From Macrostomum hystrix (Eukaryota > Animalia > Platyhelminthes), in contig CATNEN010000040.1 in assembly GCA_950097015.1 (NCBI GenBank), forward strand, positions 62,001 through 126,000: DNA of 64,000 bases, read 5' to 3'. Below, one piece after another: positions 3,406-63,355 of this stretch. Position 1 is the first letter of the stretch; every line of letters begins with the position of its first letter. The notes below the pieces were generated by a model. It worked only from the letters and a program-made list of their open reading frames with translations. It ran no database searches and was not told the DNA's origin. A program made the position numbers and the translations under genes.

Positions 3406-4705
3406 ATGAGCGATCCTATCCAAGTAGCCGACGGGAAGCCGGTTGACGACAAGTACCTAATGCTGACTAACCCGCGCGAGTACCGCAAGGCCCGGATGAA
3501 GAATATGAAGCTGGACAGCGTGCTGCGCAAGCAGCTGCTGGCCTGGCGCAGCGAGGAGCAACTGGCACTAGGCCAGCTGCGATTCGCCAGCCGCGAGGCC
3601 GAGCAGCAGAAGGAGTCGCTGCGGCAGCAGCTGCTGTTCAGCCGGGCCACCAGTCTGGCCTGCCTGGAGGCGCAAGCCAACGGCGGCGAGTCGCTAAGAG
3701 ACCAGCTGGCTCGCCTGCAGCAGGGGTGAGCCCTGCCGATGATGGGCTTGCATCTGATGTATTTAAGATAGAATTATCTGAGTATCTAGATTAGCATCTA
3801 GTGCAGGGGTAGGCAAACTTATTTGCTGGCGGGCCAAAGGGAGAACCTAAAAGACGACAGCAGGCCGCATTGACTGTATAAATATGAGATAGGGGAGAGA
3901 TGAGACACGGGAGAGATAGACACGGGAGAGATGAGACACGGGAGAGATAAGACACGGGAGAGATGAGACACGGGAGAGATAAGACACGGGAGAGATGAGA
4001 CACGGGAGAGATAAGACACGGGAGAGATGAGACACGGGAGAGATAAGACACGGGAGAGATAAGACACAGGAGAGATAAGACACGGGAGAGATAAGACACG
4101 GGAGAGATGAGACACGGGAGAGATGAGACACGGGAGAGATGAGACAGGAGAGATTAGACACGGGAGAGATGAGACAGGAGAGATTAGACACGGGAGAGAT
4201 GAGACAGGAGAGATTAGACACGAGAGAGATGAAACAGGACACTGTAGATGTCAGAAGGGGCAACGGGCCGGATTTGGGAGCTTCGAGGGCCGCATCTGGC
4301 CCGCGGGCCGGAGTTTGCCGACCCCTGATCTAGTGGGATACAGATTAGCATCTTGTGGGATACAGATTAGCATCTTGTGGGATACAGATTAGCAGCTTGT
4401 GGGATACAGATTAGCATCTAGTGGGATACAGATTAGCATCTAGTGGGATACAGATTAGCATCCAGTGGGATACAGATTAGCATCTTCGCGAGGCCCTCTT
4501 CAACCTCGGCAGCGCGGACATCTACGCGCTGGACTATGCCAAGTCGGTCCGGCGGCCACGCAAAACCGGCCAGCAGCTGCGCCAGGAGGTGGCTCAGCGC
4601 TTGGCCGAGAAGCTGGAGTCGCAGGCCGGCGCCCTGGCTGCCGCAAAACGACGAAGCACGGCCGGCAGCTGGCTGGGTCGGAGAAAACCGAACGAGGAAA
4701 AGTAG
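3406..4705 (+). CDS. Hypothetical coiled-coil protein, about 170 aa; predicted exons 3406-3725 and 4513-4705
   Basis: AAAATG start and strongly GC3-biased codons. Donor GG|GTGAG (phase 2) joins in frame to pyrimidine-rich CAG|C at 4513, giving ...LARLQQG-ADIYALDYAKSVRRPRK...EEK*. AATAAA near 5290. No family recognised. Confidence 0.7.
3804..4327. mobile_element. Non-autonomous hAT (Charlie/Buster-type) MITE in an intron
   Basis: TIRs CAGGGGTAGGCAAACT / AGTTTGCCGACCCCTG (16 bp, 1 mismatch). Perfect 8-bp TSD ATCTAGTG at 3796-3803 and 4328-4335. Subterminal GGCCCGCGGGCC motif typical of this family. Confidence 0.9.
3888..4232. repeat. 16-bp minisatellite (GAGATGAGACACGGGA) inside the hAT MITE
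   Basis: Tandem units seen directly; reverse complement of the unit at 11725-12568. Confidence 0.9.
4328..4485. repeat. 22-bp minisatellite (GATTAGCATCTAGTGGGATACA)
   Basis: About 7 units; a partial unit lies left of the hAT insertion at about 3786-3803. Confidence 0.9.
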
Positions 4706-7225: not shown

Positions 7226-10200
7226 ATGGCTGGTCCACTGGCGCGTGTGAATCAGCTGCTAAAACTGCTTTGGGGCCTTCTTTGGGCCGCATGGAACTTT
7301 CTAGTCGGGTAAGCTTAGATAGAGAGTGCATACTGTGACTTCTAATCCTACTATCGATTCTACTGATTGATTTTTATCCATAATTATTTCCCAAATAGTC
7401 TGAACGAAAATGATTGGCTGGCGGTGACATCAAACGAAAATCGTCGGCGAGAGCAGCTGTTTAACTCCAGCTTACAGTCGGAGTCACTCAGCCTGCCTTG
7501 GACCATTGAGATGACTCAACTGAATGATGGTACGTGCGATGGTGGGCCGCTGACTGCGCGTCAAAATTTATGAGCACTTTTGATCGGTAGGTTAGGCAGA
7601 TCGGTAGGTTAGGCAGATCGGTAGGTTAGGCAGATCGGTAGGTTAGGCGGATCGGTAGGTTTGGCAGATCGGTAGGTTAGGCAGATCGGTAGGTTAGGCA
7701 GATCGGTAGGTTAGGCAGATCGGTAGGTTAGGCAGATCGGTAGGTTAGGCAGATCGGTAGGTTAGGCAGATCGGTAGGTTAGGCAGATCGGTAGGTTAGG
7801 CAGATCGGTAGGTTAGGCAGATCGGTAGGTTAGGCGGATCGGTAGGTTTGGCAGATCGGTAGGTTAGGCAGATCGGTAGGTTAGGCGGATCGGTAGGTTA
7901 GGCAGATCGGTAGGTTAGGCAGATCGGTAGGTTAGGCAGATCGGTAGGTTAGGCAGATCGGTAGGTTAGGCAGATCGGTAGGTTAGGCGGATCGGTAGGT
8001 TAGGCGGATCGGTAGGTTAGGCAGATCGGTAGGTTAGGCGGATCGGTAGGTTAGGCAGATTGGTAGGTTTGGCAGATCGGTAGGTTAGGCAGATCCAGGG
8101 ACTACTAAAACACTCGGGACGCGAAACGAGCCAAATCATGGTGAAAAAAGTTGGGGGCTCGTTTAAGTCTATGGGCGCCCAATTTTTCATGCATTAAATG
8201 CATTATGATCAGCTGAGCTGCTGAAAAGACTAAGGCCACAGTTCTATTATTTTTGCTTCAAAAGGTATAGAAGGTTCTCTAAAAGGTTGTTAGTAATATT
8301 TACTATGTTTTCTGTTGTCTTTGAGTAGTAAAACACGGCCGTACAGAGTACAATGACATACATTTAAGCACGTGAGAAAAACACGAAGAAAGGGTTTTAA
8401 CGTAGCATGGTGTATATAGCGCGGAATGGAACTGAACATAGCTTATTTGAGGAGGAACTCATATGAGGACCTGCATAGGAAGAACTGGGGTACTAAGGTC
8501 TGCACCTGGCGGTTGAATAGTTAAGGTTCCATTGGATTCAGTTTGCCAATTGTTGCGAATGCACTTCAGAATGTGAACAAAGTCAAAGATCATGTAAAAT
8601 TTCGACACCTGCGCAGGATCCTTCCCAATCCATGGTGGTTCACTTCCATCGTTAAATAAGGCAAAGCATCGGCGATTGGCTGGGTGGTTGTCACAGACCA
8701 GAGCAACGACGCGACCACCGTTTTGATTGATTGTTTTAATGCACTGGCTGACGTTCATTTTCATAAACTCTGCCGTTAAGAGATAGGTTGGAAGTAGCCG
8801 AATAACAAATGGTACTCCTCCAAATAGTGGCTTCACCATTATATCCAGAATCGTGCGAGCTGCCTGGCTTGGGTCGTCAACAGATCGTCCCAGAAGGTGG
8901 CGACAGCGGTAGCGAACTGACGGCTGACGACGTGATGTCGTAGCGCGATTGTTGGAACTGACTAGTGAAAGCCTCAGTTGCTGAATCAAAAACATTATCG
9001 ATGGATCAATCCGGGATTCAAGCTCGGTATTTGCGGCCAAAGTACTCTGCATTTTCTTTACAAATGCTGTTACCTCGTGTTGAACTTTAGAGTCGGAATT
9101 CTTGCAACGCACAATGACAGCATCCAATTGGGACCAATACTTTAGTGTCGGTTGAAATCCCAGCAAGTCTCGAATCAGAACAGGTGTGTGCATAATGAAT
9201 GCGCGAACGGAGAAGTTTGGGGCAATAAAAACTCGAACAGAAAGTTCTCCATCCGCATCTAACGAAAACAGGTAGACTTCTTCGCCAAGGATGGTGGCGA
9301 TCAACGCATGCTGAGTCACAACTTCCACGCTCTTGACAACCACTTTAACTTGCAGTTAAAGACGCTGCACTTTCTCGGCATTTTTCACATTCGCACAAGA
9401 GTTGGGGGCTTGTTCTTTGCCCTCACACTTCTTGAGACTTAAGAGTTGCAGTTGGAATGGTCATAGAACACTGCTTTCAAACGAGCCCCCAACTTTTTTC
9501 ACCATGATTTGGCTCGTTTCGCGTCCCGAGTGTTTTAGTAGTCCTCCCTGGGCAGATCGGTTGGTTTCGTAGATTGGTAGGTTAGGCAGATCGGTAGGTT
9601 AGACAGATCGGTAGGTTTGGCAGATCGGTAGGTTACGCAGATTGGTAGGTTAGTCAGATTGGTAGGTTATGCAGATCGTTCGGTTAAGCAGATCGGTAGG
9701 TTAGGCAGATCGGTAGGTTAGGCGGATCGGTAGGTTAGGCAGATCGGTATGTTAGGCAGATTGGTAGGTTAGGCAGATTGGTAGGTTAGACAGATTGGTA
9801 GGTAAGGCAGATTGGTAGGTTAGGCAGATTGGTATGTTAGGCAGATTGGTAGGTTAGGCAGATTGGTAGGTTAGGCAGATCGGTATGTTAGGCAGATCGC
9901 TAGGTATTTTCGTCATCAATCCGCAGAGGACGCGGTGGAACTCACCTGCGCCTACAACCTGTCGCCAAGCAGTGGCCTCAGCGACATTCAAATCGACCGC
10001 ATCGGCGTCATGCGATCCGTTGGGGTCACCGAGTTCTACACCGGCTGCCTGGAGAGGTGGTCCGACTTTCTGCGGCAGTCGCAGGAGCGCCTTGAGCCTC
10101 TAGACTGGAGGCAAGTGGCTCGGGATGCGGGGACTAGTTGGGAATCGATGCTATTGTGATCATTCTGTTGATTGAATGTGCGTTTCTTCACAGCGAATCC

Positions 10201-11724: not shown

Positions 11725-12568
11725 CCCTGTCACTCCCCTGTCTCATCTCTCCCCTGTCTCATCTCTCCCATGCCTCATCTCTCCCCTGTCTCATCTCTCC
11801 CCTGTCTCATCTCTTCCGTGTCCCATCTCTCCCGTGACTCATCCCTATCGTGTCCCATCTCTCCCGTGTCCCATCTCTCCCGTGTCCCATCTCTCCCGTG
11901 TCCCATCTCTCCCGTGTCCCATCTCTCCCGTGTCCCATCTCTCCCGTGTCCCATCTCTCCCGTGTCCCATCTCTCCCGTGTCCCATCTCTCCCGTGTCCC
12001 ATCTCTACCGTGTCCCAACTCTCACGTGTCTCATCTCTCCCGTGTCCCAACTCTCACGTGTCTCATCTCTCCCGTGTCTCATCTCTCCCGTGTCTCATCT
12101 CTCCCGTGTCTCATCTCTCCCGTGTCTCATCTCTCCCGTGTCTCATCTCTCCCGTGTCTCATCTCTCCCGTGTCTCATCTCTCCCGTGTCTCATCTCTCC
12201 CGTGTCTCATCTCTCTTCTGTCTCATCTCTCCCTTGTCCCATCTCTCCCGTGTCTCATCTCTCCCCTGTCTCATCTCTCCCCTGTCTCATCTCTTCCCTG
12301 TCTCATCTCTTCCCTGTCTCATCTCTCCCCTGTCTCATTCTCCCCTGTCTCCTCTCTCCCTGGTCTCATCTCTCCCATGTCTCATCTCTCCCCTGTCTCA
12401 TCTCTCCCCTGTCTCCTCTCTCCCTTGTCTCATCTCTCCCATGTCTCATCTCTCCCCTGTCTCATCGCTCTTCTGTCTCATCTTTCCCATGTCTCATCTC
12501 TCCCCTGTCTCATCTCTCCCATGTCTCATCTGTCCCTGTCTCATCTCTTCTCGTATCTCATCTCTCTG
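11725..12568. repeat. 16-bp minisatellite (TCTCATCTCTCCCGTG)
   Basis: Tandem units; source of artefact ORFs 11770-12729 and similar. Confidence 0.95.
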
Positions 12569-33679: not shown

Positions 33680-34085
33680 TTTATTGATCAGATCGATTCT
33701 TAATTCTGATTGATTGATCAGATCGGATCGATTCTTAATTCTGGTTGATTGATCAGATCAGATTAATTCTTATTTCTAATTGATTGATCAGATCGGATCG
33801 ATTCTTAATTCTGATTGATTAATCAGATCGGATCGATTCTTAATTCTGATTGATTGATCAGATCAGATCGATTCTTAATTCTGATTGATTGATCAGATCA
33901 GATCGATTCTTATTTCTAATTGATTGATCAGATCGGATCGATTCTTAATTCTGATTGATTGATCAGATCAGATTGATTTTTATTGCTAATTGATTGATCA
34001 GATCAGATCGGATTGATTCTTAATTCTGATTGAATGATCAGATCAGATCGGATTGATTCTTAATTCTGATTGATCAGATCAGTCC
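33680..34085. repeat. GATC-rich minisatellite of about 33-38 bp (GATTGATCAGATCGGATCGATTCTTAATTCT)
   Basis: Lies between the syntrophin stop (34133) and a minus-strand AATAAA at about 33680-33685. Confidence 0.9.
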
Positions 34086-34132
34086 CTGGTTTCGAACTGG
34101 GCCCGCGCAGAGTCAAAGTGTCGAAGTACTGC

Positions 34133-37100
34133 TTAAGTGAGCAGCAGGCCGTGCCTGTGCAGCTTGGAGCTGAGAATGGTGTGCAGGATGAACACGAACG
34201 GCTTCGGGCAGCCCAGCAGGTCCAACTCGAACTGGCCCTGCTCGCCAAAGTCCAGCCAGGCCAGCCGTTGGCCGTCATCAGCCGAGCGTTGCAGGCTCTC
34301 GTAGGGCAGGCACCAGAGCTGCCGGCCGCTCGCCGCCTCCCGCATGGCGAAGCCGCAGTCGGCGTGCAGCACCAGCCGGCAGTCGTGGCCGGCGTAGCGA
34401 CAGGCGACGGCCACCTCTTGAGCGCTGTCGACAGCCGAATGGGCGGCGTCGATGAGAGTTCGCGACCAAGCGGCCAGATCGGCCTCGGTTTCAACGCGGA
34501 AGACGTGCGCCTCAACGCCGAGCCGGCCGCCAGTGCGAGTGCCGAACAGGAAGTAGGCGGCCTGGCGGGCTGTCGGCACCAGGCGGGTGGCCAGCAGCGG
34601 ATGCTGGTGCAGCGGCGTTGACCAGGCCTCCCGACTGGCCGGGGCGCACTCGTACAGCAGGATGTCCCGGTCTGAGATGGCACAGAAGGCTGGACGCCAG
34701 CCCGGATGACCGGAGTCGTCGTGCACCTGGGGAATGGCGGGTGAGAATGGCTTTCGGGTGAGAATTGCTGTTACTTGGGAGATAATGGGAGACACTATGT
34801 TGAGAATGGCGGTTTCGGGGTGAGAATGACGGTAACTAGGGTGAGAATGACGGTAACTAGGGTGAGAATGACGGTAACTAGGGTGAGAATGACGGTAACT
34901 AGGGTGAGAATGACGGTAACTAGGGTGAGAATGCCGGTTACTAGGGTGAGAATGCCGGTAACTAGGGTGAGAATAGCAGTCCTAGAAGGGCAATAGGAAT
35001 AGTCAGGCTGACAATTAGAGACGTCAAAGGCCTCCTATGAGTCGGTGAAAGGCCTCGTTTCCTGCTGTTAAACCCGATTATTCACACCTGAACAAGCGGC
35101 CCAGTCATTTAAAATCTGCCGTGTAAGTCCTACCCGGGAGTAAGGCAGACAGGGACGCAGCTGTGACTGTGCTTCTGACTCTATTCCGGTAGAAAGTGAA
35201 AGGCAGAGAGCCAGGGTATTGAATCAATAGATGCAATTATTGCATAATAACCCTAGTGTCAGTGGTGAGTGTCAGTGGTGAGTGTCAGTGGGGAGTGTCA
35301 GTGGTGAGTGTCAGTGGGGAGTGTCAGTGGGGAGTGTCAGTGGGGAGTGTCAGTGGGGAGTGTCAGTGGGGAGTGTCAGTGGGGAGTGTCAGTGGGGAGT
35401 GTCAGTGGGGAGTGTCAGTGGTGAGTGTCAGTGGGGAGTGTCAGTGGTGAGTGTCAGTGGGGAGTGTCAGTGGGGAGTGTCAGTGGGGAGTGTCAGTGGT
35501 GAATGTCAGTGGTGAGTGTCAGTGGGGAGTGTCAGAGGGGAGTGTCAGTGGGGAGTGTCAGTGGGGAGTGTCAGTGGGGATTGTCAGTGGGGAGTGTCAA
35601 GCTAATGCAATCGCGGGCCAAAATGCCTTTTCAGACATCACTCACAGCATTTTATTCGCAATCAAAATCTTTAATTAAAACCTATCCATTTATTTCGCTT
35701 CCACCCAGGTGTCGGTCTGTGACACTCAGGTGGGAAGTCACAAAGCTCACTCACCGATCTATCTGAATTATTTCTAATTGAAAAGCTGGCACGCATATGG
35801 TGCATGGCAGTGGCTCTTTATATAAGAAAATTGATTCCTCGACAAGCTTTGGGTGGGATCGTGAGAAAAAAAAAGCTCAATGTACTATTATGGGGAGCTG
35901 AAGCATAGGGTCAAATGACTCCAGAAGGTACATTCATGATATAGAAGCTTTCCTCGAGATGCAAGCAATGGCTGGTGCAAATAACGATGGTCATGACCGA
36001 TTGTAAACTCGTAGGGTTGACTGATAGTAAACTGGGAGTGTGTTATGACCGATAGTAAACTGGGAGTGTGTTATGACCTATAGTAAACTGGGAGGGTGTT
36101 ATGACCGATGGTAAACTGTGATGGTTATGACCGATAGTAAACTGGGATGGCTATGACCGATTGTAAACTGGGATTGGCTATGACCGATGGTAAACTGTGA
36201 TCGTTATGACCGATAGTAAACTGGGATGGCTATGACCGATTGTAAACTGGGATTGGCTATGACCGATGGTAAACTGTGATGGTTATGACCGATAGTAAAC
36301 TGGGATGGCTATGACCGATTGTAAACTGGGATTGGCTATGACCGATGGTAAACTGGGATGGCTATGACCGATTGTAAACTGGGATTGGCTATGACCGATT
36401 GTAAACTGGGATTGGCTATGACCGATTGTAAACTGGGAGGGTGTTATGACCGATAGTAAACTGGGATGGTTATGACCGATAGTAAACTGGGATGGTTATG
36501 ACCGATAGTAAACTGGGATTGGCTATGACCGATAGTAAACTGTGATTGTTATGACCGATTGAAAACTGGGATGGTTATGACCGATTGTAAACTGAAATTA
36601 TTCAAGTGAACAATGGCCAATGACTGACTGACCTGCTCAGCCAGCCAGCCCATCCTCTTGACCTCCTGGCTGGCGGGCAGCACCCGGTTGAGCTCAGCCA
36701 GGCAGGCCGCGGTCAGTAGGTCGATCTGGGCGTGCAGCGCGGCGAACCAGACGCTTGCCCGCTCGGGTGAAGGACAGCGCAGCAGGCAGGAGCGCTTGCA
36801 GCAGGGGCTGTGCAGCTCCAGGCAGCAGCGGCCGGGGTCTGGAAGGCTGAGGCCGCGGCACAGGTAGCTCAGCCGCAGCGGGACGCATCGGCGCTCGCCA
36901 CCACCTGAGGCGGCCGCGGTTCCCGGCGGTGCAGTGGCGGCCGCGGCGGCGACTGCTGCCGATGATGCAGCCGTTGATGCCGGCTGAGCCTGTTGGCAAG
37001 AGCAGAAAATCAACCAGAGAATAGCAGATTAAGCCCAAAGAATGTCGCGAAATTTGGATATTTTAGAACCCACATTGTGGATTTAGAATCCAAGTCATTC

Positions 37101-39064
37101 AGAATCTGGGATCGCTTTTGAGGATCTCAGAGAACTCGATCCCACTTTTGAGGATCTCGGAGAACTCGATCCCACTTTTGAGGATCACAGAGAACTCTAT
37201 CCCACTTTTGAGGATCTCGGAGAACTCGATCCCACTTTTGAGGATCTCAGAGAACTCGATCCCACTTTTGAGGATCTCAGAGAACTCGATCCCACTTTAA
37301 TCAGCCACAGAGACTGAGCAGTAAGCACTCACGCCGGAGGCCAGGGGCACAGACTCGGCCGGGCCGCCCCAGCCGACCTCGGCCAGGGTGGCGGCTGTGG
37401 GCTTTCGAAAATACGGCGTCACCTCGCGCAGAAATTTGACTTCCAGTTCGACAGTTCGGCCGGCCTTTTTTAACGCCTTGACAGCGTCGTCGTGGCTTGC
37501 CTCGCGCAGATCCTCGCCGTTGACAGACAGGATGGCGTCACCGACGTACAGAGCGCCGGAGTTGTCAGCGGCCATTCCGGCGAAGATCTTGCTGATGAGG
37601 ATTGGCATCTTATTCTCGCGGCCGCCTTTGATGCTGATGCCGAGGCCGACATTCTCTTCCTTGACTATGCGGACTAGGCGCTTCTGGGAGGAGGGTGTAT
37701 CGCCAGCAGTCCCTGATGATGGAGTCTGAGCCGATGGGTCTGAATAGGGGGTGGGGGGCAAGACAAAAATGAAAACTGAATAGCTGCTTATAGAATACCA
37801 GGATATAGAAGTGTTTTTCTTTGCTATGTTGAACCATTTTATCTTTATGGGTGCATCACAAAAAGTGTTCGAAATAATGTTATACCTTAGTCGAAGTTAA
37901 TTACTTAAGCCTGGGTAATATGTTATCCAAGGGTGTACTTTATTAAACTTTTAATAAATGGTACTTTTGAGTCCCAGAATTTTTGCATTAGAAAAAAATA
38001 ATTTAATAGTCAGATTCTAGTACAGTTGATTTTTAGTTATATTGCTTAATAACAAACTAATTTTCAGTTTAAAAGAACAATATTTTAATCTGCCTGTCTG
38101 TGTTAGTTACAAGTAAAACCCAAAACAAATTTACTTTATAAAAAAGTCTATTGAATATATTAGTGTAATTTGTTTTCCATTCTCATATTGACAGCAAGGC
38201 CTTAGTTTCTTGGTTTCATCTTTTAAAAATATGATTGTTTATGCATTTATTTTTAAGCACATGAACTAAAAAATGTAAATGTCATATGGTAATTGTAATA
38301 GCTACACTGATAAGTGGAATGGCTTAAAAACTTTTATATAGATAACTAATAAATAGAATGTTATGATTTATAGTTAAAAGCTTTGAAAATAACTTTATTT
38401 GCAGTCACAATACATAAAATGACAAAACTTCACATTATCATACATTTTCTATACCAAAATATTTCATATTCTTATTTCTTATACAAAAGTCAAATACAAA
38501 TAAGTGAAAAATAAAAATATATTTCAATAGTTCCATTTTCATATCACAGAACCTACCTTTGTGAGTATCATTAGCACCATTTGAAGTTGTAACACCATCA
38601 TTATCATCAGAGGGACCATTTGAAGATTTATAGGAATCATCACCTGACCTGTGCTTTCCACTGTCAGATCTTAGTAGATTCTGACCACTCTGGAATGTCT
38701 TTGCAGATCCTCTTAAAGATGACTCCTGAACTAAGCATGGTTGAAAACTTTTAGAAAAACTACTTTCTGCCTTTGAAGCCTCATCAGATGATGCTGCTTT
38801 TGTCAGCTGGCTTTGTTTGGCAGATTGAGACAATTCTGTTCCAGCTCCTTGAACCTGATGACTTTCAGAGCTACAAATGTCGCCATTTTTTGCATTTTGT
38901 GGCACAGCATCAATCTTTGGTAGATTTTCAACAACAGATGAGGCAGGGATAAAAATAATTAAGGAATCCTCAAGTAAAGACACAGTAACCGTAATCCATT
39001 TTTGGCGAACATATATCTCTAAATCTTCTGTTAAAATGCACGTATCCAATGCCATTGTAGACAT
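34133..39064 (-). CDS. SNTB1: Alpha/beta-type syntrophin (split PH1, PDZ, PH2, SU); predicted exons 39064-38557, 37739-37333, 36989-36633, 34726-34133
   Basis: [31 protein letters not shown]...[31 protein letters not shown]2 and SU ([19 protein letters not shown]) are diagnostic. GT-AG junctions join in phase 1,0,0. Orthology among SNTA1/SNTB1/SNTB2 cannot be resolved by eye. Confidence 0.93.
34790..34975. repeat. 21-bp minisatellite (GGTGAGAATGACGGTAACTAG)
   Basis: Syntrophin intron 3; degenerate units run into the acceptor pyrimidine tract. Confidence 0.9.
35255..35600. repeat. 13-bp minisatellite (GAGTGTCAGTGGG)
   Basis: Syntrophin intron 3. Confidence 0.95.
35990..36595. repeat. 26-27-bp minisatellite (ATGACCGATAGTAAACTGGGATGGTT)
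   Basis: Syntrophin intron 3, starting about 40 bp from the donor. Confidence 0.93.
37115..37298. repeat. 30-bp minisatellite (TTTTGAGGATCTCAGAGAACTCGATCCCAC)
   Basis: About 6 units in syntrophin intron 2. Confidence 0.93.
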
Positions 39065-43037: not shown

Positions 43038-44446
43038 ATGTCATCAGCACAGGAGCTATTTTACAATCAGCAGCAGGTGTCCTTTCACTTCTGGAACTGT
43101 CAGCTGACCGAAGCCAGCCCGCGGTATCGATGGCAGCCCGAGAACTCGCCGAGCAGTGCAGTGGAAAGCTTGGAGCTCGCGTCAAAGCGTCGCCAAGGAA
43201 ACCGGAAAAGCGACTCGGAAGCGAATGAAAATGGCGAAGAAAAATCTGAGAAAGGTGCGGCTAAGGTGGATGGGAAAAGCGACAATCCGAATGGCGAGAG
43301 CTTAGAAGGCCAAAAAATGAACGGTGAGAATGCGAACGGCAAAGACGCTAATGGCGATGATCTGAATGGCGAAGGTTACGAGACCTCGGAGAACTGCGAG
43401 GCGACGCCCGACGCCGACTACATGCAGCACGTGCTGAAGGTGAACGCCTGCATTCTGGGGCCGAAGGCGGCTGGCGTCCACCTTATCGCAGTGCGCACCA
43501 GGTGCTATAGACAGGAGGAGCCAGACAGCTGTCCCATTGTGTGCATCGACCCGGACAGTCAGCGGACGGTGGCGCTGGGCTACGAGTTTGTGCTCGACAG
43601 CCAGAATGAGGTCGTCACCTTCGAGCTGGTGGAGGGCAGCGGCCCCGTCTGGCTCACCGGACTGCACCAGGTGAGGTCCGGTGTTCGAATCCCCGGTGTT
43701 TGAATCCCCGATGCTGTAATCCCCGATGCTGTAATCCCCGATGCTGTAATCCCCGATGCTCTAATCCCCGATGCTGTAATCCCCGATGCTGTAATCCCCG
43801 ATGCTGTAATCTCTGATGCTGTAATCCCCGATGCTCTGATCCCCGATGCTGTAATCCCCGATGCTCTAATCCCTGATGCTGTAATCCCCGATACTGTAAT
43901 CCCCGATGCTCTGATCCCCCGATGCTATGATCCCCCGATGCTCTGATACCCGATGCTGTAATCCCCGATGCTCTGATCCCCCGATGCTCTGATCCCCGAT
44001 GCTCTAAACCCCATCCCCGGTGTTTATCTTAAAAATAATTCGTCGAAATCATATTCAAAATAATTTAGGTTTACTTGAATGATGCCGACTGGGACAACGA
44101 CGGCGAAGTTGGCGGTGAAGAAACCGACTTGGATGCGGAGATCAGCAGCGACGGTGAAAGCGACGAAAATAGCGTAATCGACGACACATCTCGATTTCGA
44201 CTTGCCGGCGTCAACTTCGACGATGATGAAGTCCTGGACGAGGATTTGAACGATGGCGAGGATCAGGAGGAAGGCGACGGCGAAGGTGTGAACTCGACAT
44301 CGGTAAGGGCGAAGCAAATCGGCAAGCGGTCGCCAATCACCACGGCGCAGCTGCGCAGTCGCAAGCGTCGACGCCTCGCCAGTGTTGAGGAAGACGGAGA
44401 AGCTGACGCGGATGGCAAGCGGGAATGCGAGTCGGCCGATGTCTGA
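43038..44446 (+). CDS. Nucleoplasmin/nucleophosmin-family histone chaperone, paralog A; exons 43038-43670 and 44069-44446
   Basis: Core motifs FHFWNCQL...HVLKV..CILG...VTFELVEGSGPVWLTGLHQ. Phase-0 intron. Exon 2 encodes a long Asp/Glu tract and a basic NLS-like RSRKRRR. Confidence 0.85.
43680..44010. repeat. 15-bp minisatellite (CCCCGATGCTGTAAT) in the paralog A intron
   Basis: Starts about 10 bp after the donor; same family as 46545-46860. Confidence 0.95.
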
Positions 44447-44904
44447 GTTATACAGGCGTGACGCAAGCATAATATTTGGATTATCTACTGGCACTTTCTC
44501 TGAGCAGGTGTGAAAATATTCCTTTCAATACGCGCACAATGAATACTGACTTAATAGTGCAACAAATATATTCGAACTTCGAAATCTTTCTCATTCCGTT
44601 TTCGCGTTAATCAAATCGCTAAATTGTTATTGAACTTGTATGGGCAGCAAAGGAAGGAGCTGTAACACACTAAAAGTGGGGAACGAACCTCGCGCTGGCA
44701 GACCGAGACCGGTTTCTGGCTTGTTTGCCTTCGTCAGTCAGCCATAGCCACACGCCGTCCTCTCCCACCACTCTTTGTGTGCACAGAAGTCTCTTTTAAG
44801 CTTGCCATTTTTATGGCGATATTTTTTAGTGTTATGTGAGAGTTTTGCAGCCAAGTCTTTGCTTTTCTACTGTTGTCAGTAGTCTGAATTGTATCTCTCA
44901 CAGG

Positions 44905-45622
44905 AGGGAAGGAGTGAGAATGAGTGGGTGGGAGAGAGTGAAAATGCGTGGGAGTAAGGTAGTGAAAATGCGAGAGAAGAAGGGAAGGAAGAAAGGAAGT
45001 CAAAATGCGTGGGAATAAGGGAGTAAAAATGCGTGGGAATAAGGGAGTGAAAATGCGAGTGAGGAAGGGAGTCAAAATGCGTGGGAATAAGGGAGTAAAA
45101 ATGCGTGGGAATAAGGGAGTGAAAATGCGAGTGAGGAAGGGAGTGAAAATGCGTGGGAGGAAGGGAGTGAAAATGCGAGTGAGGAAGGGAGTCAAAATGC
45201 GAGTGAGGAAGGGAGTGAAAATGCGAGTGAGGAAGGGAGTGAAAATGCGTGGGAGGAAGGGAGTGAAAATGCGAGTGAGGAAGGGAGTCAAAATGCGAGT
45301 GAGGAAGGGAGTGAAAATGCGAGTGAGGAAGGGAGTGAAAATGCGTGGGAGGAAGGGAGTGAAAATGCGAGTGAGGAAGGGAGTGAAAATGCGTGGGAGG
45401 AAGGGAGTGAAAATGCGAGTGAGGAAGGGAGTGAAAATGCGTGGGAGGAAGGGAGTGAAAATGCGTGGGAGGAAGGTAGTGAAAATGCGAGAGAAGAAGG
45501 GAAGGAAGGAAGGGAGTGAAAATGCGAGTGAGGAAGGGAGTGAAAATGCGTGGGAAGAAGGGAGTGAAAACTACGAGGGAAGAAGGGAGTGAAAATGCGA
45601 GGGAGGAAGGGAGTGAAAATGG
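44905..45622. repeat. 24-bp minisatellite (GAGTGAAAATGCGAGTGAGGAAGG) between the convergent 3' ends
   Basis: About 30 units. Confidence 0.95.
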
Positions 45623-45883
45623 AATCAAAAGAGTCTGGCATTAGCTGATTGTCAGTTTTGGAGTTTGACGAATTTGAGTGTATTTCACTATTTAATTATA
45701 AAGCTGACTGAGAATTCGAAATTTTAACAGCAAAAAGTTCGTTGCGGTAATAAAAATGATTATTTTTTACGGTAAAATTAGAAAGCACGCAAAAAATTTA
45801 GTTGAAATTGTTAGTAGAAAATGATAAAATTAGTTCCATACGAGTAGAAGCACAGTGACCCATAGAGGGATGGTTTTGGTCCA

Positions 45884-47415
45884 TCAGGTTTTTCTCGCAG
45901 CTCGGCCCTTGTTGCCGTTTTTCTTATTCGCTGGAATCGGCTGCCGCTTCTTAGGGGACGCCACCGGTTTCTGCTGGTCTGTCTTGGACGCGCGAGCCAC
46001 CCGCTTGGCAACCGGTCTGGCCACTTCTTCTTCCTCTTCTTCTTCGTCCTCCTCTTCATCTTCTTCCTCTTCGGTCAAGTCGACAGACTCGTCCGCTTCG
46101 TCCTCCTCGTCGATCGAATCAGCGTCGGGCTCGCCATCGTCGGCGTCGCAGACTGCGCTATCGTCAGTGTCATGCATGCGAACCTGAATTGACATTTGGG
46201 ATATCTGAGACTGTGGGATATTCGAGACTGTGGGATATTCGAGACTGTGGGATATTCGAGACTGTGGGATATTCGAGACTGTGGGATATTCGAGACTGTG
46301 GGATATTCGAGACTGTGGGATATTCGAGACTGTGGGATATTCGAGACTGTGGGATATTCGAGACTGTGGGATATTCGAGACTGTGGGATATTCGAGACTG
46401 TGGGATATTCGAGACAGTGGGATATTCGAGACTGTGGGATATTCGAGACTGTGGGATATTCGAGACTGTGGGATATTCGAGACTGTGGGATATTCGAGAC
46501 TGTGGATATTCGAGACTGTGGGATAGCATTGATGATTGGAGCATCGGGGATCAGATCATCGGGGATTAGAGCATCGGGGATTAGAGCATCGGGGATTAGA
46601 GCATCGGGGATTAGAGCATCGGGGATTAGAGCATCGGGGATTAGAGCATCGGGGATTAGAGCATCGGGGATTAGAGCATCGGGGATTAGAGCATCGGGGA
46701 TCAGAGCATCGGGGATTAGAGCATCGGGGATTAGAGCATCGGGGATTACAGCATCGGGGATTACAGCATCGGGGATTACAGCATCGGGGATTACAGCATC
46801 GGGGATTACAGCATCGGGGATTACAGCATCGGGGATTCAAACACCGGGGATTCGAACACCGGACCTCACCTGGTGCAGTCCGGTGAGCCAGACGGGGCCG
46901 CTGCCCTCCACCAGCTCGAAGGTGACGACCTCATTCTGGCTGTCGAGCACAAACTCGTAGCCCAGCGCCACCGTCCGCTGACTGTCCGGGTCGATGCACA
47001 CAATGGGACAGCTGTCTGGCTCCTCCTGTCTATAGCACCTGGTGCGCACTGCGATAAGGTGGACGCCAGCCGCCTTCGGCCCCAGAATGCAGGCGTTCAC
47101 CTTCAGCACGTGCTGCATGTAGTCGGCGTCGGGCGCCGCCTCGCCGTTGTCATTGGCGTCCTCGTCGACCGCGGTGCCGTTCTTGTGCCCGTTGGCTTTC
47201 GAGTCACCGTTGCTCTCGCCATTTTTCTTGTCTTCCTTCTCCTCCGAGTTGCCTTTATCAGCAGTCTGTCGCTTCGGCCGCTCGCCGTTGCGCTGCGCTG
47301 TGGCCGAAGCGGATGCGGTGGCCTCCGGCTCCCAGCGGTAGCTGGCGCTGGCCTCGCTGAGCTGGCAGCTCCAGAAGTGGAAGGACACCTGCTGCTGCTG
47401 GAAGTCGGTTGTCAT
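45884..47415 (-). CDS. Nucleoplasmin/nucleophosmin-family histone chaperone, paralog B; exons 47415-46870 and 46183-45884
   Basis: Same core domain. Donor CAG|GTGAG and acceptor TTCAG|GTT in phase 0. Exon 2 has a poly-E tract followed by KRVAR...SPKKR...KGRAARK. Confidence 0.85.
46195..46522. repeat. 17-bp minisatellite (TATTCGAGACTGTGGGA) in the paralog B intron
   Basis: About 19 units, adjacent to the acceptor. Confidence 0.95.
46545..46860. repeat. 15-bp minisatellite (GCATCGGGGATTASA) in the paralog B intron
   Basis: Reverse complement of the 43680-44010 unit. Confidence 0.95.
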
Positions 47416-61071: not shown

Positions 61072-61415
61072 GGGGGTGGGTGGCAGAGCGGTTAACGCAT
61101 TTGCCTCTCGCACCAAGGTCCCTGAGCTCGATTCCGCGGCGAAGCCACATTTTGGGATGCAGCCCCATAGAGAAAGCTTGGGGGCTTGTCGTGCAACTTA
61201 CGCCATTGAGGGCCAAACTCCAAGGTACATTGAGAGTGTACACTGACTGACGATGAGAAAGTCAGGGCAGATGTACACATCCGTGTGAGCGTGTGCCAGG
61301 TGTGTGCTCAGGAGTCAGCGAAATGGGCAGAATTGCCTCCTCGCTGGCTGCTGGTCCAGTGTCACCAAATGATGTGCCAATGCCCGCAGCCCTCCTGCAA
61401 TTATTACTATTATAT
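61072..61415 (+). mobile_element. tRNA-derived SINE family 2, near full length
   Basis: A-box TGGCAGAGCGG, B-box-like GAGCTCGATTCC, TTA-rich tail; three copies in the window. Confidence 0.85.
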
Positions 61416-63067
61416 TGTAGTTAATCGCCCTCCAACCTAGTCTAACGTGAGAGACCTCTTCTTTGATTGAATATAAAGCTAGCTATTTCTCAAAAGGCCC
61501 TGCTTCTTGTTGGCGGGGCTGCAGCAGAACCGTCTATCGCTGCACATCGGCACTCACTAGCTCACCCAGTTTCCTCTTTTGATTGGCGCGTCAAAGGAAT
61601 TCTGTCTGTGCTCAGGCCGACACAAAGTAACATTATTTTCTTTTCGCTTTAGCCGGCACTGCAACTATTCACAATGCTTCAGCGAAGAACAGACATTTAC
61701 AGGGTGATGGAAATTTTTCGCTTTTGTCCTCCAATCCCCGTTGCTGTCGCATTGCGTCGCGAATCATTTTTGGTGTTATCGACAGGGCCTGTCTGCTTTA
61801 CCAGCGTGTCTTCTTCTCAAAGCATCGACCCTTGCTGCTTCCCTGCGCTTTCAGTTCCACTTTTCTGTTTCCCATTTCTATGCCCGTCACTGCATGGGAC
61901 TCCAGCCATTGGCCCACCTGCCTCATTATTATTGAATTCTTTAATTGGAGCCGTGTAAAGGTTTTGGCCACCTTCTGGCAGGCTAAACGTCTTCGTCTCT
62001 TTCATCCTATTCAACTTTCCACTGTATGGCGCTAACATGAGCTCCCTTTCCTTTCTCCTGTTTTCTTTTTCTAATTCTAAAATAGCCTCTCTCTGTATGT
62101 GTATAATGTGACGCCTTGCGACTCAAGTGTGCTTGTACTTTTATAAGGACTGTCTCCGGGCTATAGAGCTCCGGCTTGATTTGCTTCTGTTTCTCTGATA
62201 ATCAGCATTCTCTCCACCTTGGTTTGCTCCCCACTGCTTCTGCTGGACTCTCGGATTTCACGCTTAATTTGCACTATTTTAATTTGTACAGCGGTGCTTA
62301 CTAAGCAAGTCTCCCCCGTTGCCCGCCGCTGCCAAAGTCACTTGAGACTTAAGACATTTTCTGAATGTAGTAGTTGTGGAAATTCACTATTTTCACTCAC
62401 TCATTCTCCCGTGCCAAAGCCCTTCATTCCTATGCGATCTTCCCCGATAAAAACAGTACTATAAGGTCGTTTCTAATGCCACTCTAGCGTCGTTAGCGAC
62501 TCTGCATCGACCCTGCGAGCATAGAACGGCTTCCAATGCCGAGGTTATCGTTTAATCTGGTTCACCTGTTTGGCTGGTGTCTTAAATCCTATTTCGTTGT
62601 CTCGTATTCCATCTTTAAACTTTATTACCACTCTTATTATGCAAATTTAGTTTTGTTTGTATTTATTGGGAACTTATTTCCTACTCGAATACTCGGTTTT
62701 ACTTCCTGTTCCTCACACTTCTCTAGCTCTTTGTTCCACTCCAATCTTTTTTGTAATCAAGCCAGTTTCCTAACGCTTTGTTGCATATAATTACGATAGA
62801 ATTTATTCTGTGGACCAACAGTCTCTCTAGTTGGTTGGCCCACCAATAAGTATCATCTTACTGTTTTTACGAATTTCGACTCAAAACTGGCTTTCATCCT
62901 ATAAATCGGGGTCTATTGTGTCTAGGTCCGAAGAATGAGTGAAAAGTTACCATCAGTTGATTTAAAAATATGGTGTGGAGATCCAGTCCACGGACTGAAT
63001 GAAGCTGAACACAGCCTTTATTAGCCGCGCACAATAGCTGCAGTTGTGCCACTACCTGTTCATCTAT

Positions 63068-63355
63068 GATTTATTATTATTCTTTGCAGGAGGGCTGCGG
63101 GCAATGGCACATCATTTGGTGACACTAGACCCGCAGCCAGCGAGGAGGCAATTCTGCCCAATTCGCTAACTCCTGAGCACACACGCACTCAGATACCGTA
63201 CACAGGCACACGCTCACACAGGTGTGTACATCTGCCCTGAATTTCTCATCGTCAGGCAGTGTACACTCTCACTGTGCCTTGGAGGTTGGCCCCCAAGGGC
63301 GTAAATTGCACGACAAGCCAACAAGCCTTCTATCCACGGCTGCGCCCCAAATAAA
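63068..63355 (-). mobile_element. SINE family 2 copy, 5'-truncated and inverted
   Basis: Reverse complement aligns with about 61150-61410; (AAT)n tail. Confidence 0.85.

What the first reader, a model, noticed from the sequence alone, without database searches (positions are those of the whole stretch)
43038..47415. Convergent nucleoplasmin paralogs share a 100% identical tract of about 350 bp inside otherwise diverged genes
Seen: A 43405 to about 43760 is the exact reverse complement of B 47135 to about 46780 by manual alignment. The tract covers the C-terminal half of the core domain, the splice donor and the first intron repeat units. The N-terminal strand region differs at many synonymous sites (e.g. 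TTT/TTC, TGT/TGC, CGA/CGC), and the loops and exon-2 tails are unalignable. Inference: an old inverted duplication is being homogenised by local gene conversion. Established: nucleoplasmin cores form pentamers. Homogenising the core while the acidic and basic tails diverge could therefore keep two chaperone subunits able to co-assemble as hetero-oligomers with different histone or cargo tails.
Basis: partly seen in the sequence, partly recalled or inferred. Interest (0 to 1): 0.75.

Follow-up and report, generated by a model that had tools for sequence, protein, structure and literature searches.

The report
Gene conversion between flatworm nucleoplasmin paralogs
Two old, tail-to-tail copies of a flatworm histone-chaperone (nucleoplasmin) gene share a letter-perfect 356-base patch because one copy was recently pasted over the other; this is a clean but ordinary case of gene conversion, a process that other notes of this scan report many times in the same genome.

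Summary
Window 43405-43760 is the perfect reverse complement of 47135-46780, 356 nt.

Both genes are intact two-exon nucleoplasmin-family genes: Pfam PF03066 E 5e-12 and 2e-12, and a predicted eight-strand core that matches the NO38, NLP and nucleoplasmin cores. The genome is the published Macrostomum hystrix assembly.

The tract covers strands 3-8 of the core, the splice donor and the first units of a 15-bp intronic minisatellite. That minisatellite occurs nowhere else in the genome.

- **Age contrast:** in the 24 alignable N-terminal codons, 9 of about 13 synonymous sites differ (dS about 1.8). In the core, 0 of about 61 differ (Fisher 6e-9).
- **Orthology:** gene B matches its M. lignano counterpart in loop and tail, while A's tail matches nothing. 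Yet A and B have identical cores that differ from the M. lignano core at 9 of 87 residues.
- **Reading:** an old inverted duplication with a recent local gene conversion. Codon composition suggests B was the donor.
- **Untested:** the hetero-pentamer idea. It is also unnecessary, because diverged nucleoplasmin paralogs already co-assemble.

The scan has found the same mosaic pattern on other DNA of this genome. It is a new member of a known kind and of low interest.

The parts
43038..43670 (+). Gene A exon 1, 211 codons. It holds strands 1-2 (FHFWNCQL...YRWQPE), a disordered insertion loop of about 87 residues rich in N, G, E and K, then strands 3-8 of the nucleoplasmin core, ending in GSGPVWLTGLHQ.
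   Evidence: Translation. Pfam PF03066 E 5.4e-12, 46.6 bits against a cut-off of 25.8. AF2 strands at 17-23, 29-32, 130-140, 145-156, 163-170, 177-187, 191-201 and 204-210, with the loop 39-125 below pLDDT 50.
43671..44068 (+). Gene A intron (GT...AG, phase 0), almost filled by a 15-bp minisatellite at 43688-44012 (21.5 copies, 88% matches).
   Evidence: Sequence, TRF, unit-by-unit listing.
44069..44448 (+). Gene A exon 2, 125 codons plus TGA. An acidic tail followed by a bipartite-NLS-like KR...RKRRR motif. It has no relative in this genome or in public proteins.
   Evidence: Translation. Only a self-match in the own genome. 0 hits among 1.84 billion representatives. No match to B's tail or to P0001.
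46870..47415 (-). Gene B exon 1, 182 codons. Same plan as A, with a shorter loop.
   Evidence: Translation. Pfam PF03066 E 1.6e-12. 66% identical to M. lignano P0001 over 179 residues, loop included.
46184..46869 (-). Gene B intron (GT...AG, phase 0). It holds the same 15-bp minisatellite next to exon 1 (46534-46852, 21.3 copies, 96% matches), then a different 17-bp minisatellite (46197-46525, 19.4 copies).
   Evidence: Sequence, TRF, unit listing.
45884..46183 (-). Gene B exon 2, 99 codons plus TGA. A poly-E/D acidic tract and a basic KR...KKR tail, orthologous to the tail of M. lignano P0001.
   Evidence: Translation. 75% identity over 53 residues to P0001. The junction HQ|VRMHD matches HQVRVHD in P0001.
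43405..43760 (+). Exact conversion tract, copy in gene A. It covers 264 coding bases (PDADY...GLHQ) plus 2 bases of the preceding codon, the splice donor and 90 intron bases.
   Evidence: 356-nt exact run. 0 differences at about 61 synonymous sites.
46780..47135 (-). Exact conversion tract, copy in gene B. B is the probable donor.
   Evidence: GC3 of the tract is 0.85, against 0.83 in B's own 5' part and 0.59 in A's 5' part.
43761..44007 (+). Older or faster-mutating part of the shared block: the remaining 15-bp repeat units. They are collinear with B 46779-46536 and about 93% identical up to 43919.
   Evidence: Both arrays have about 22 units, and both carry the CTGAT variant unit at position 11.
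43068..43142 (+). Unconverted homologous N-terminal segment (strands 1-2). It pairs with B 47397-47323 at 81% identity.
   Evidence: blastn. Nei-Gojobori pS 0.68, dS about 1.8, dN 0.09.
44907..45621 (.). A 24-bp minisatellite in the 1.4-kb spacer between the two stop codons.
   Evidence: TRF.

Best explanation
A and B are two functional nucleoplasmin-family histone-chaperone genes of the flatworm Macrostomum hystrix. They arose by an old inverted duplication and sit tail to tail, 1.4 kb apart.

Recently, a stretch of at least 356 bp was copied non-reciprocally from one gene onto the other. It ran from codon 123 of A through the end of exon 1 into the intronic minisatellite. This is interlocus gene conversion, that is, homologous repair using the inverted paralog on the same DNA molecule as template. 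It erased all accumulated differences, silent and intronic ones included.

Gene B is the likelier donor. The shared 15-bp minisatellite was probably carried across by this or an earlier, longer conversion (block of about 620 bp at 96%). The array may itself be the break-prone site that starts the repair.

The tract ends 5' just inside alignable sequence, next to an indel-ridden disordered loop, and 3' inside the repeat array.

What is shown and what is inferred:
- Shown: the mosaic of 81%, 100% and 93% identity, and the nucleoplasmin fold.
- Inferred: the mechanism, the direction, the role of the minisatellite, and that both genes are expressed.
For: - Exact 356-nt inverted identity inside a 619-nt block at 96%.
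- Synonymous sites: 9 of about 13 differ in the N-terminal 24 codons (dS about 1.8, dN 0.09), against 0 of about 61 in the core. Fisher P 6e-9; run-length P about 5e-10.
- The tract crosses the exon-intron border, so selection on the protein cannot explain it.
- Segment incongruence at protein level. In strands 1-2, A-B differ at 5/24, as far apart as B and M. lignano (5/24). In the core, A-B differ at 0/88 while both differ from M. lignano at 9/87. B's loop and tail align to M. lignano P0001; A's do not.
- Only these two copies of the tract and of the 15-mer array exist in the 220-Mb genome.
- GC3 of the tract is 0.85. That equals B's flank (0.83, P 0.84) and differs from A's flank (0.59, P 9e-5).
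- Both reading frames are intact, with GT-AG phase-0 introns, acidic tails and basic NLS-like ends.
- Close inverted pairs are classic substrates for conversion: Drosophila Hsp70Aa/Ab and Amy-p/Amy-d (PMC3924832), and the C. elegans hsp16 and hsp70 inverted pairs (PMC3966223).
Against: - The identity therefore rests on one polished assembly built with canu, Arrow and Pilon (PMC10468722), and the locus lies on a small 349-kb contig.
- The age estimate rests on only 24 codons.
- No A-type ortholog was found in M. lignano. 'Older than the species split' is therefore inferred from divergence, not from a tree.
- The GC3 argument for direction could instead reflect GC-biased conversion, since higher GC inside conversion tracts is reported in Drosophila (PMC3924832).
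Confidence: 0.85

Rival explanations
1. Adaptive concerted evolution. The mechanism is still conversion, but it is retained by selection because identical cores let A and B subunits mix in one pentamer that carries two kinds of tails.
For: - The core from strand 3 to strand 8 is identical in protein, while the tails differ completely.
- Hetero-oligomers of nucleoplasmin paralogs exist in flies and humans (PMC6277087, PMC3367197).
Against: - Those known hetero-oligomers form between paralogs whose cores are not identical, so identity is not required.
- Strands 1-2 are not homogenised in A and B: 5 of 24 residues differ. NLP F6, needed for oligomerisation (PMC6277087), lies in this N-terminal part by my own alignment.
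- Silent and intronic identity is a by-product of a recent event and says nothing about selection.
- Other notes of the scan report the same mosaic in many unrelated gene families of this genome (unchecked). That favours a general mutational process.
Confidence: 0.12
2. Assembly or polishing artefact. The two tracts really differ, and read correction or short-read polishing homogenised them, or the inverted join is chimeric.
For: - The assembly was made from noisy PacBio reads with canu, purged of haplotigs and polished with Arrow and Pilon (PMC10468722).
- The locus is on a small, repeat-rich 349-kb contig.
Against: - The whole pair spans 4.4 kb, well within single long reads.
- The flanks of the tract are unique and different, so this is not a fold-back palindrome.
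- Polishing could at most erase a few differences between already near-identical copies. It could not create a 100% island between an 81% flank and unalignable flanks.
- Each gene keeps an intact frame and splice sites.
Confidence: 0.04
3. No conversion. Either a recent whole-gene duplication with very fast divergence of the N-terminus, loop and tail, or extreme purifying selection on the core.
For: - The core is strongly conserved as protein: about 90% identity to M. lignano.
- The loops and tails are low-complexity and prone to indels.
Against: - Synonymous divergence is near saturation only about 260 bp upstream of a tract with none.
- The identity continues 90 bp into the intron.
- B's loop and tail are conserved between species, so these regions are not intrinsically hyper-fast.
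Confidence: 0.02

Closest known systems
Interlocus (ectopic) gene conversion between closely linked inverted paralogs, for example Drosophila Hsp70Aa/Ab and Amy-p/Amy-d (PMC3924832) and the C. elegans hsp16-48 and hsp70-7/-8 inverted pairs (PMC3966223)
   Same: - Adjacent paralogs in opposite orientation, a few kb apart.
- Tracts of identity that include silent sites.
- Higher GC in the tract than in one flank.
- Conversion confined to the part where homology persists.
   Different: - Here the tract is a single short island of 356-620 bp inside otherwise saturated or unalignable genes. It is not whole-gene concerted evolution.
- It straddles an exon-intron border and ends in a minisatellite private to the pair.
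- No population or cross-species DNA evidence is available yet.
Nucleoplasmin/nucleophosmin histone chaperones (Xenopus nucleoplasmin 1K5J, NO38 1XE0/1XB9, Drosophila NLP 1NLQ, human NPM1-3)
   Same: - Pfam PF03066 core and a predicted eight-strand beta-sandwich.
- The GSGPV...G.H signature at the last strands.
- An acidic tail followed by a bipartite-type basic motif.
   Different: - An insertion of about 60-87 residues, disordered and rich in N, G, E and K, between strand 2 and strand 3. From my memory of the family, this is where the short A1 acidic loop sits.
- Sequence identity to solved cores is only about 14-27%.
- Pentamer formation and histone binding are untested.
Hetero-oligomerising nucleoplasmin paralogs: Drosophila NLP/NPH (PMC6277087) and human NPM1/NPM3 (PMC3367197)
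   Same: Two paralogs with a related core and different tails in one genome. Co-assembly is plausible.
   Different: The known cases co-assemble without identical cores and are not reported to be homogenised by conversion. For A and B, co-assembly is only a conjecture.

Membership tests
Nucleoplasmin/nucleophosmin family (PF03066) | Sequence match to the core-domain profile above the curated threshold | tested here: met
   A scores 46.6 bits and B 48.3 bits against a cut-off of 25.8. The profile covers only positions 18-100, because the first strands are separated from the rest by the long loop. The third paralog on C38 scores 26.8 bits.
Nucleoplasmin/nucleophosmin family (PF03066) | Eight-stranded beta-sandwich core fold | tested here: met
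   The AF2 model has 8 strands with pLDDT 76-91 in the strands, although the mean over the whole model is only 61 because of the loop. The top 40 or so Foldseek hits are all NO38, NLP, nucleoplasmin, NPM1 or NPM2 cores, with target-normalised TM 0.58-0.78 and E down to 1e-5. The alignment behind the model held only 4 sequences.
Nucleoplasmin/nucleophosmin family (PF03066) | Disordered C-terminal tail with acidic tract(s) and a basic or bipartite nuclear localisation signal | tested here: met
   Read directly from the translations: A has DDDEVLDEDLNDGEDQEEGDGEG ... KR-x12-RKRRR, and B has EEEEDEEEDEEEEEEE ... KR...KKR. That the motifs act as an NLS is inferred.
Nucleoplasmin/nucleophosmin family (PF03066) | Homo-pentamer (or decamer) assembly and histone binding | not testable with these tools
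   Only monomer prediction is on offer, and there is no biochemistry.
Interlocus gene conversion tract | A run of identity between paralogs longer than independent evolution allows, including silent and non-coding sites | tested here: met
   A 356-nt exact run. Synonymous differences are 0 of 61 sites in the tract against 9 of 13 in the flank (Fisher 6e-9). Run-length P is about 5e-10. 90 intron bases are included.
Interlocus gene conversion tract | Gene-tree incongruence between sub-regions, judged against an ortholog | tested here: inconclusive
   At protein level only. In the core, A equals B and both differ from M. lignano at 9/87. In strands 1-2, A-B (5/24) is as distant as B-M. lignano (5/24). 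B's loop and tail are orthologous to M. lignano while A's are not. The direction of the result fits conversion. However, there is no A ortholog and no orthologous DNA, and the segments are short.
Interlocus gene conversion tract | Confirmation in reads, or polymorphisms shared between the paralogs | not testable with these tools

The most novel reading that the evidence does not exclude
The pair is held in a stable 'identical core, different tails' state by recurrent conversion over a long time. The conversion is seeded by breaks in a minisatellite private to the two introns, and selection keeps it because A and B build mixed pentamers that present two kinds of histone- or cargo-binding tails. 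On this reading the graded identity (100%, then 93%, then 81%) records repeated events rather than a single one. The many similar mosaics noted elsewhere in this genome would then reflect an unusually high rate of interlocus conversion in this flatworm.
Probability: 0.1. Interest if true: 0.5.

Novelty: new member of a known kind. Interest (0 to 1): 0.22.

Why it matters
As a single case it matters little. It adds a flatworm histone-chaperone pair to the long list of linked paralogs that are partly homogenised by gene conversion.

Three practical points follow:
- Anyone dating or building trees of Macrostomum nucleoplasmin genes from the core domain alone would wrongly see a very young duplication.
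- The pair gives a natural 'same core, different tails' system for asking what nucleoplasmin tails and the giant inserted loop do.
- Together with the other mosaics noted by this scan in the same genome (not checked here), it suggests that interlocus conversion is frequent in M. hystrix. A genome-wide survey with reads would be worthwhile.

Tried and rejected
No orthologous DNA, intron or neighbour comparison was possible.
- **Word search with A exon 1:** it returned one relative only, M. lignano P0001, which is B-like. No A-type ortholog appeared.
- **Exhaustive search with A's exon-2 tail:** 0 hits among 1.84 billion representatives. The tail stays an orphan. This does not prove absence, because representatives at 50% identity can hide members.
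- **Own-genome searches:** these found no further copy of the tract, of the 15-mer array or of A's tail. A repeat-family or transposon origin is therefore rejected. A third, distant paralog on C38 (46% different in the core) served as outgroup but resolved nothing in the 24-codon segment.
- **Purifying selection alone:** rejected on silent and intronic identity.
- **Fold-back chimera:** rejected because the sequences flanking the tract are unique and unlike each other.
- **Bacterial promoter/terminator scan**: irrelevant for a eukaryote and ignored.
- **Joined (spliced) proteins:** not searched or folded.
- **Literature search** for nucleoplasmin plus gene conversion: nothing relevant.
Full report
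**What is there**

The window lies at C40:62001-126000 of a 220,453,370-base genome in 42 contigs. The longest contig, C38, has 35,345,953 bases. These three numbers equal those published for the Macrostomum hystrix assembly (PMC10468722, Table 1). The organism is therefore that free-living flatworm.

The assembly was made with canu from PacBio reads, purged of haplotigs, and polished with Arrow and Pilon. C40 itself is only 349,451 bases long. The neighbouring genes are ordinary animal genes: a syntrophin with PDZ and PH domains at 34-38 kb, and a BCAS3-like WD40 exon at 54 kb.

**The two genes**

Gene A lies on the + strand.
- Exon 1 is 43038-43670, 211 codons.
- A GT...AG phase-0 intron runs from 43671 to 44068.
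- Exon 2 is 44069-44448.

Gene B lies on the - strand.
- Exon 1 is 47415-46870, 182 codons.
- The intron runs from 46869 to 46184.
- Exon 2 is 46183-45884.

The genes are convergent, with 1.4 kb between their stop codons.

Both first exons match Pfam PF03066 (nucleoplasmin/nucleophosmin core) well above the curated cut-off, and both weakly match solved nucleoplasmin cores by sequence.

An AlphaFold model of A exon 1 has eight strands and a disordered loop at residues 39-125. Its best structural matches are all cores of Xenopus NO38, Drosophila NLP, nucleoplasmin and human NPM1/NPM2, with target-normalised TM up to 0.78. The first two strands (FHFW.CQL...YRW.PE) are separated from strands 3-8 by an insertion of about 60-87 residues. 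From my memory of the family, the short A1 acidic loop sits at this position.

The second exons encode acidic tails that end in basic, bipartite-NLS-like motifs. B's predicted exon junction (HQ|VRMHD) is matched by the M. lignano protein P0001 (HQVRVHD).

The joined, spliced proteins were not searched or folded.

A third, distant paralog lies on C38 as a single open frame.

**The observation**

Identity by segment:

| Segment (gene A coordinates) | Identity to B | Source |
|---|---|---|
| N-terminal strands, 43068-43142 | 81% | |
| The two loops | no alignment | |
| 16 bases just before the tract, 43389-43404 | 81% | |
| The tract, 43405-43760 | 100% | |
| Repeat units after it, 43761-43919 | 93% | |
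| Rest of the introns, exon 2 | no alignment | |

It also contains the splice donor and 90 intron bases.

**Why this is conversion**

In the 24 aligned N-terminal codons, 9 of about 13 synonymous sites and 5 of about 59 replacement sites differ. This gives pS 0.68, dS about 1.8 and dN 0.09. The duplication is therefore old, and both copies have been under purifying selection.

In the 88 core codons, none of about 61 synonymous sites differs. Fisher's test gives 6e-9, and a run-length argument gives about 5e-10. With roughly 150 effectively neutral sites unchanged, divergence since the event is below about 2%. Identity that continues across the exon border into the intron cannot be due to selection on the protein.

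Comparison with the only public relative points the same way.
- B is clearly the ortholog of M. lignano P0001. Exon 1 is 66% identical with the loop alignable, and the tail is 75% identical over 53 residues.
- A's tail matches neither B nor P0001 nor anything else, in this genome or in 1.84 billion protein representatives.
- In strands 1-2, A and B are as far apart (5/24) as B and M. lignano (5/24).
- In the core, A and B are identical, and both differ from M. lignano at 9 of 87 residues.

This is the sub-region incongruence expected of conversion. It is shown only at protein level and without an A ortholog.

**Direction and the minisatellite**

Third-position GC is 0.85 in the tract, 0.83 in the rest of B's exon 1 and 0.59 in the rest of A's exon 1. 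A against the tract gives P 9e-5; B against the tract gives P 0.84. The tract therefore looks native to B and foreign in A, which suggests copying from B to A. GC-biased conversion is an alternative cause of the same pattern (PMC3924832).

The 15-bp unit AATCCCCGATGCTGT occurs only in these two introns in the whole genome. The two arrays are collinear, each with about 22 units. They start with the same two CCGGTGTT units and carry the same CTGAT variant at unit 11. Beyond unit 6 they differ mainly at one G/C site.

An intron as old as the duplication would be randomised by now. The array must therefore have been carried over by conversion, either in the same event with faster array mutation afterwards, or in an earlier and longer event (619-nt block at 96%). 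That the array also starts the repair is my inference.

**Artefact?**

I could not look at reads. A collapse or fold-back is unlikely for three reasons.
- The pair spans only 4.4 kb.
- The flanks are unique and unlike each other.
- Both frames and all four splice sites are intact.

Polishing could erase a few differences, but it could not create this mosaic.

**The functional idea**

Mixed pentamers are plausible but untested. They do not need identical cores. Drosophila NLP and NPH associate through their core domains (PMC6277087), and that paper also cites an NPM1/NPM3 complex of similar stoichiometry. NLP F6, at the N-terminal end of the core, is needed for oligomerisation there. By my own alignment it falls in the part that is not homogenised in A and B.

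The neutral account is enough: conversion persists where homology persists.

**Context in this scan**

Other notes on the same genome describe the same kind of mosaic in HHAT, cGLR, fibrinogen-lectin, EGFR, NACHT, SLC23, TEP, ZAP-like and HELZ2-like paralogs. I did not check them. They suggest that this process is common in M. hystrix, which lowers the surprise of this single case.

**Verdict**

The gene-conversion reading is supported, with confidence about 0.85. The adaptive hetero-pentamer reading is open and unnecessary. This is a new member of a known kind, with interest about 0.2.

Noticed in passing
window 1-64000: The whole window is packed with minisatellites. About 35 separate arrays with unrelated 12-56-bp units, each 0.3-1.9 kb long, sit in introns and spacers. 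The arrays flanking and inside the nucleoplasmin pair are part of this landscape.
   Followed up: partly
window 3884-4236 and 11733-12566: The same 16-bp minisatellite unit (ATGAGACACGGGAGAG) occurs in two arrays in opposite orientation, 7.5 kb apart and 86-92% complementary. A related 17-bp unit also occurs twice between them, at 7582-8095 and 9551-9905. This may be another inverted duplication that shares private repeats.
   Followed up: no
L008 1153-2094 (-) = G000:C38:23105327-23106268: A third nucleoplasmin-family gene in one open frame of 313 codons. It has extra insertions inside the core (an E/K-rich and a Q-rich loop), a long poly-E/D tail and a poly-Q run. It has no intron at the position used by A and B.
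   Followed up: partly
window 43150-43400 and 47140-47320: Both proteins carry a disordered insertion of 60-87 residues, rich in N, G, E, K and D, between core strands 2 and 3. It contains a basic KR/RPKRQ motif. The insertion is also present and alignable in the M. lignano ortholog of B. Its function is unknown.
   Followed up: no
window 61151-61420 and 63064-63351: An inverted repeat with arms of about 270 bp (86-89%) around 1.6 kb, with no convincing open reading frame inside. It may be a decayed element with terminal inverted repeats.
   Followed up: partly
window 34060-37761 (-): Exons of a syntrophin-like gene (PDZ, split PH, and the C-terminal syntrophin PH domain) with minisatellites in its introns.
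   Followed up: no
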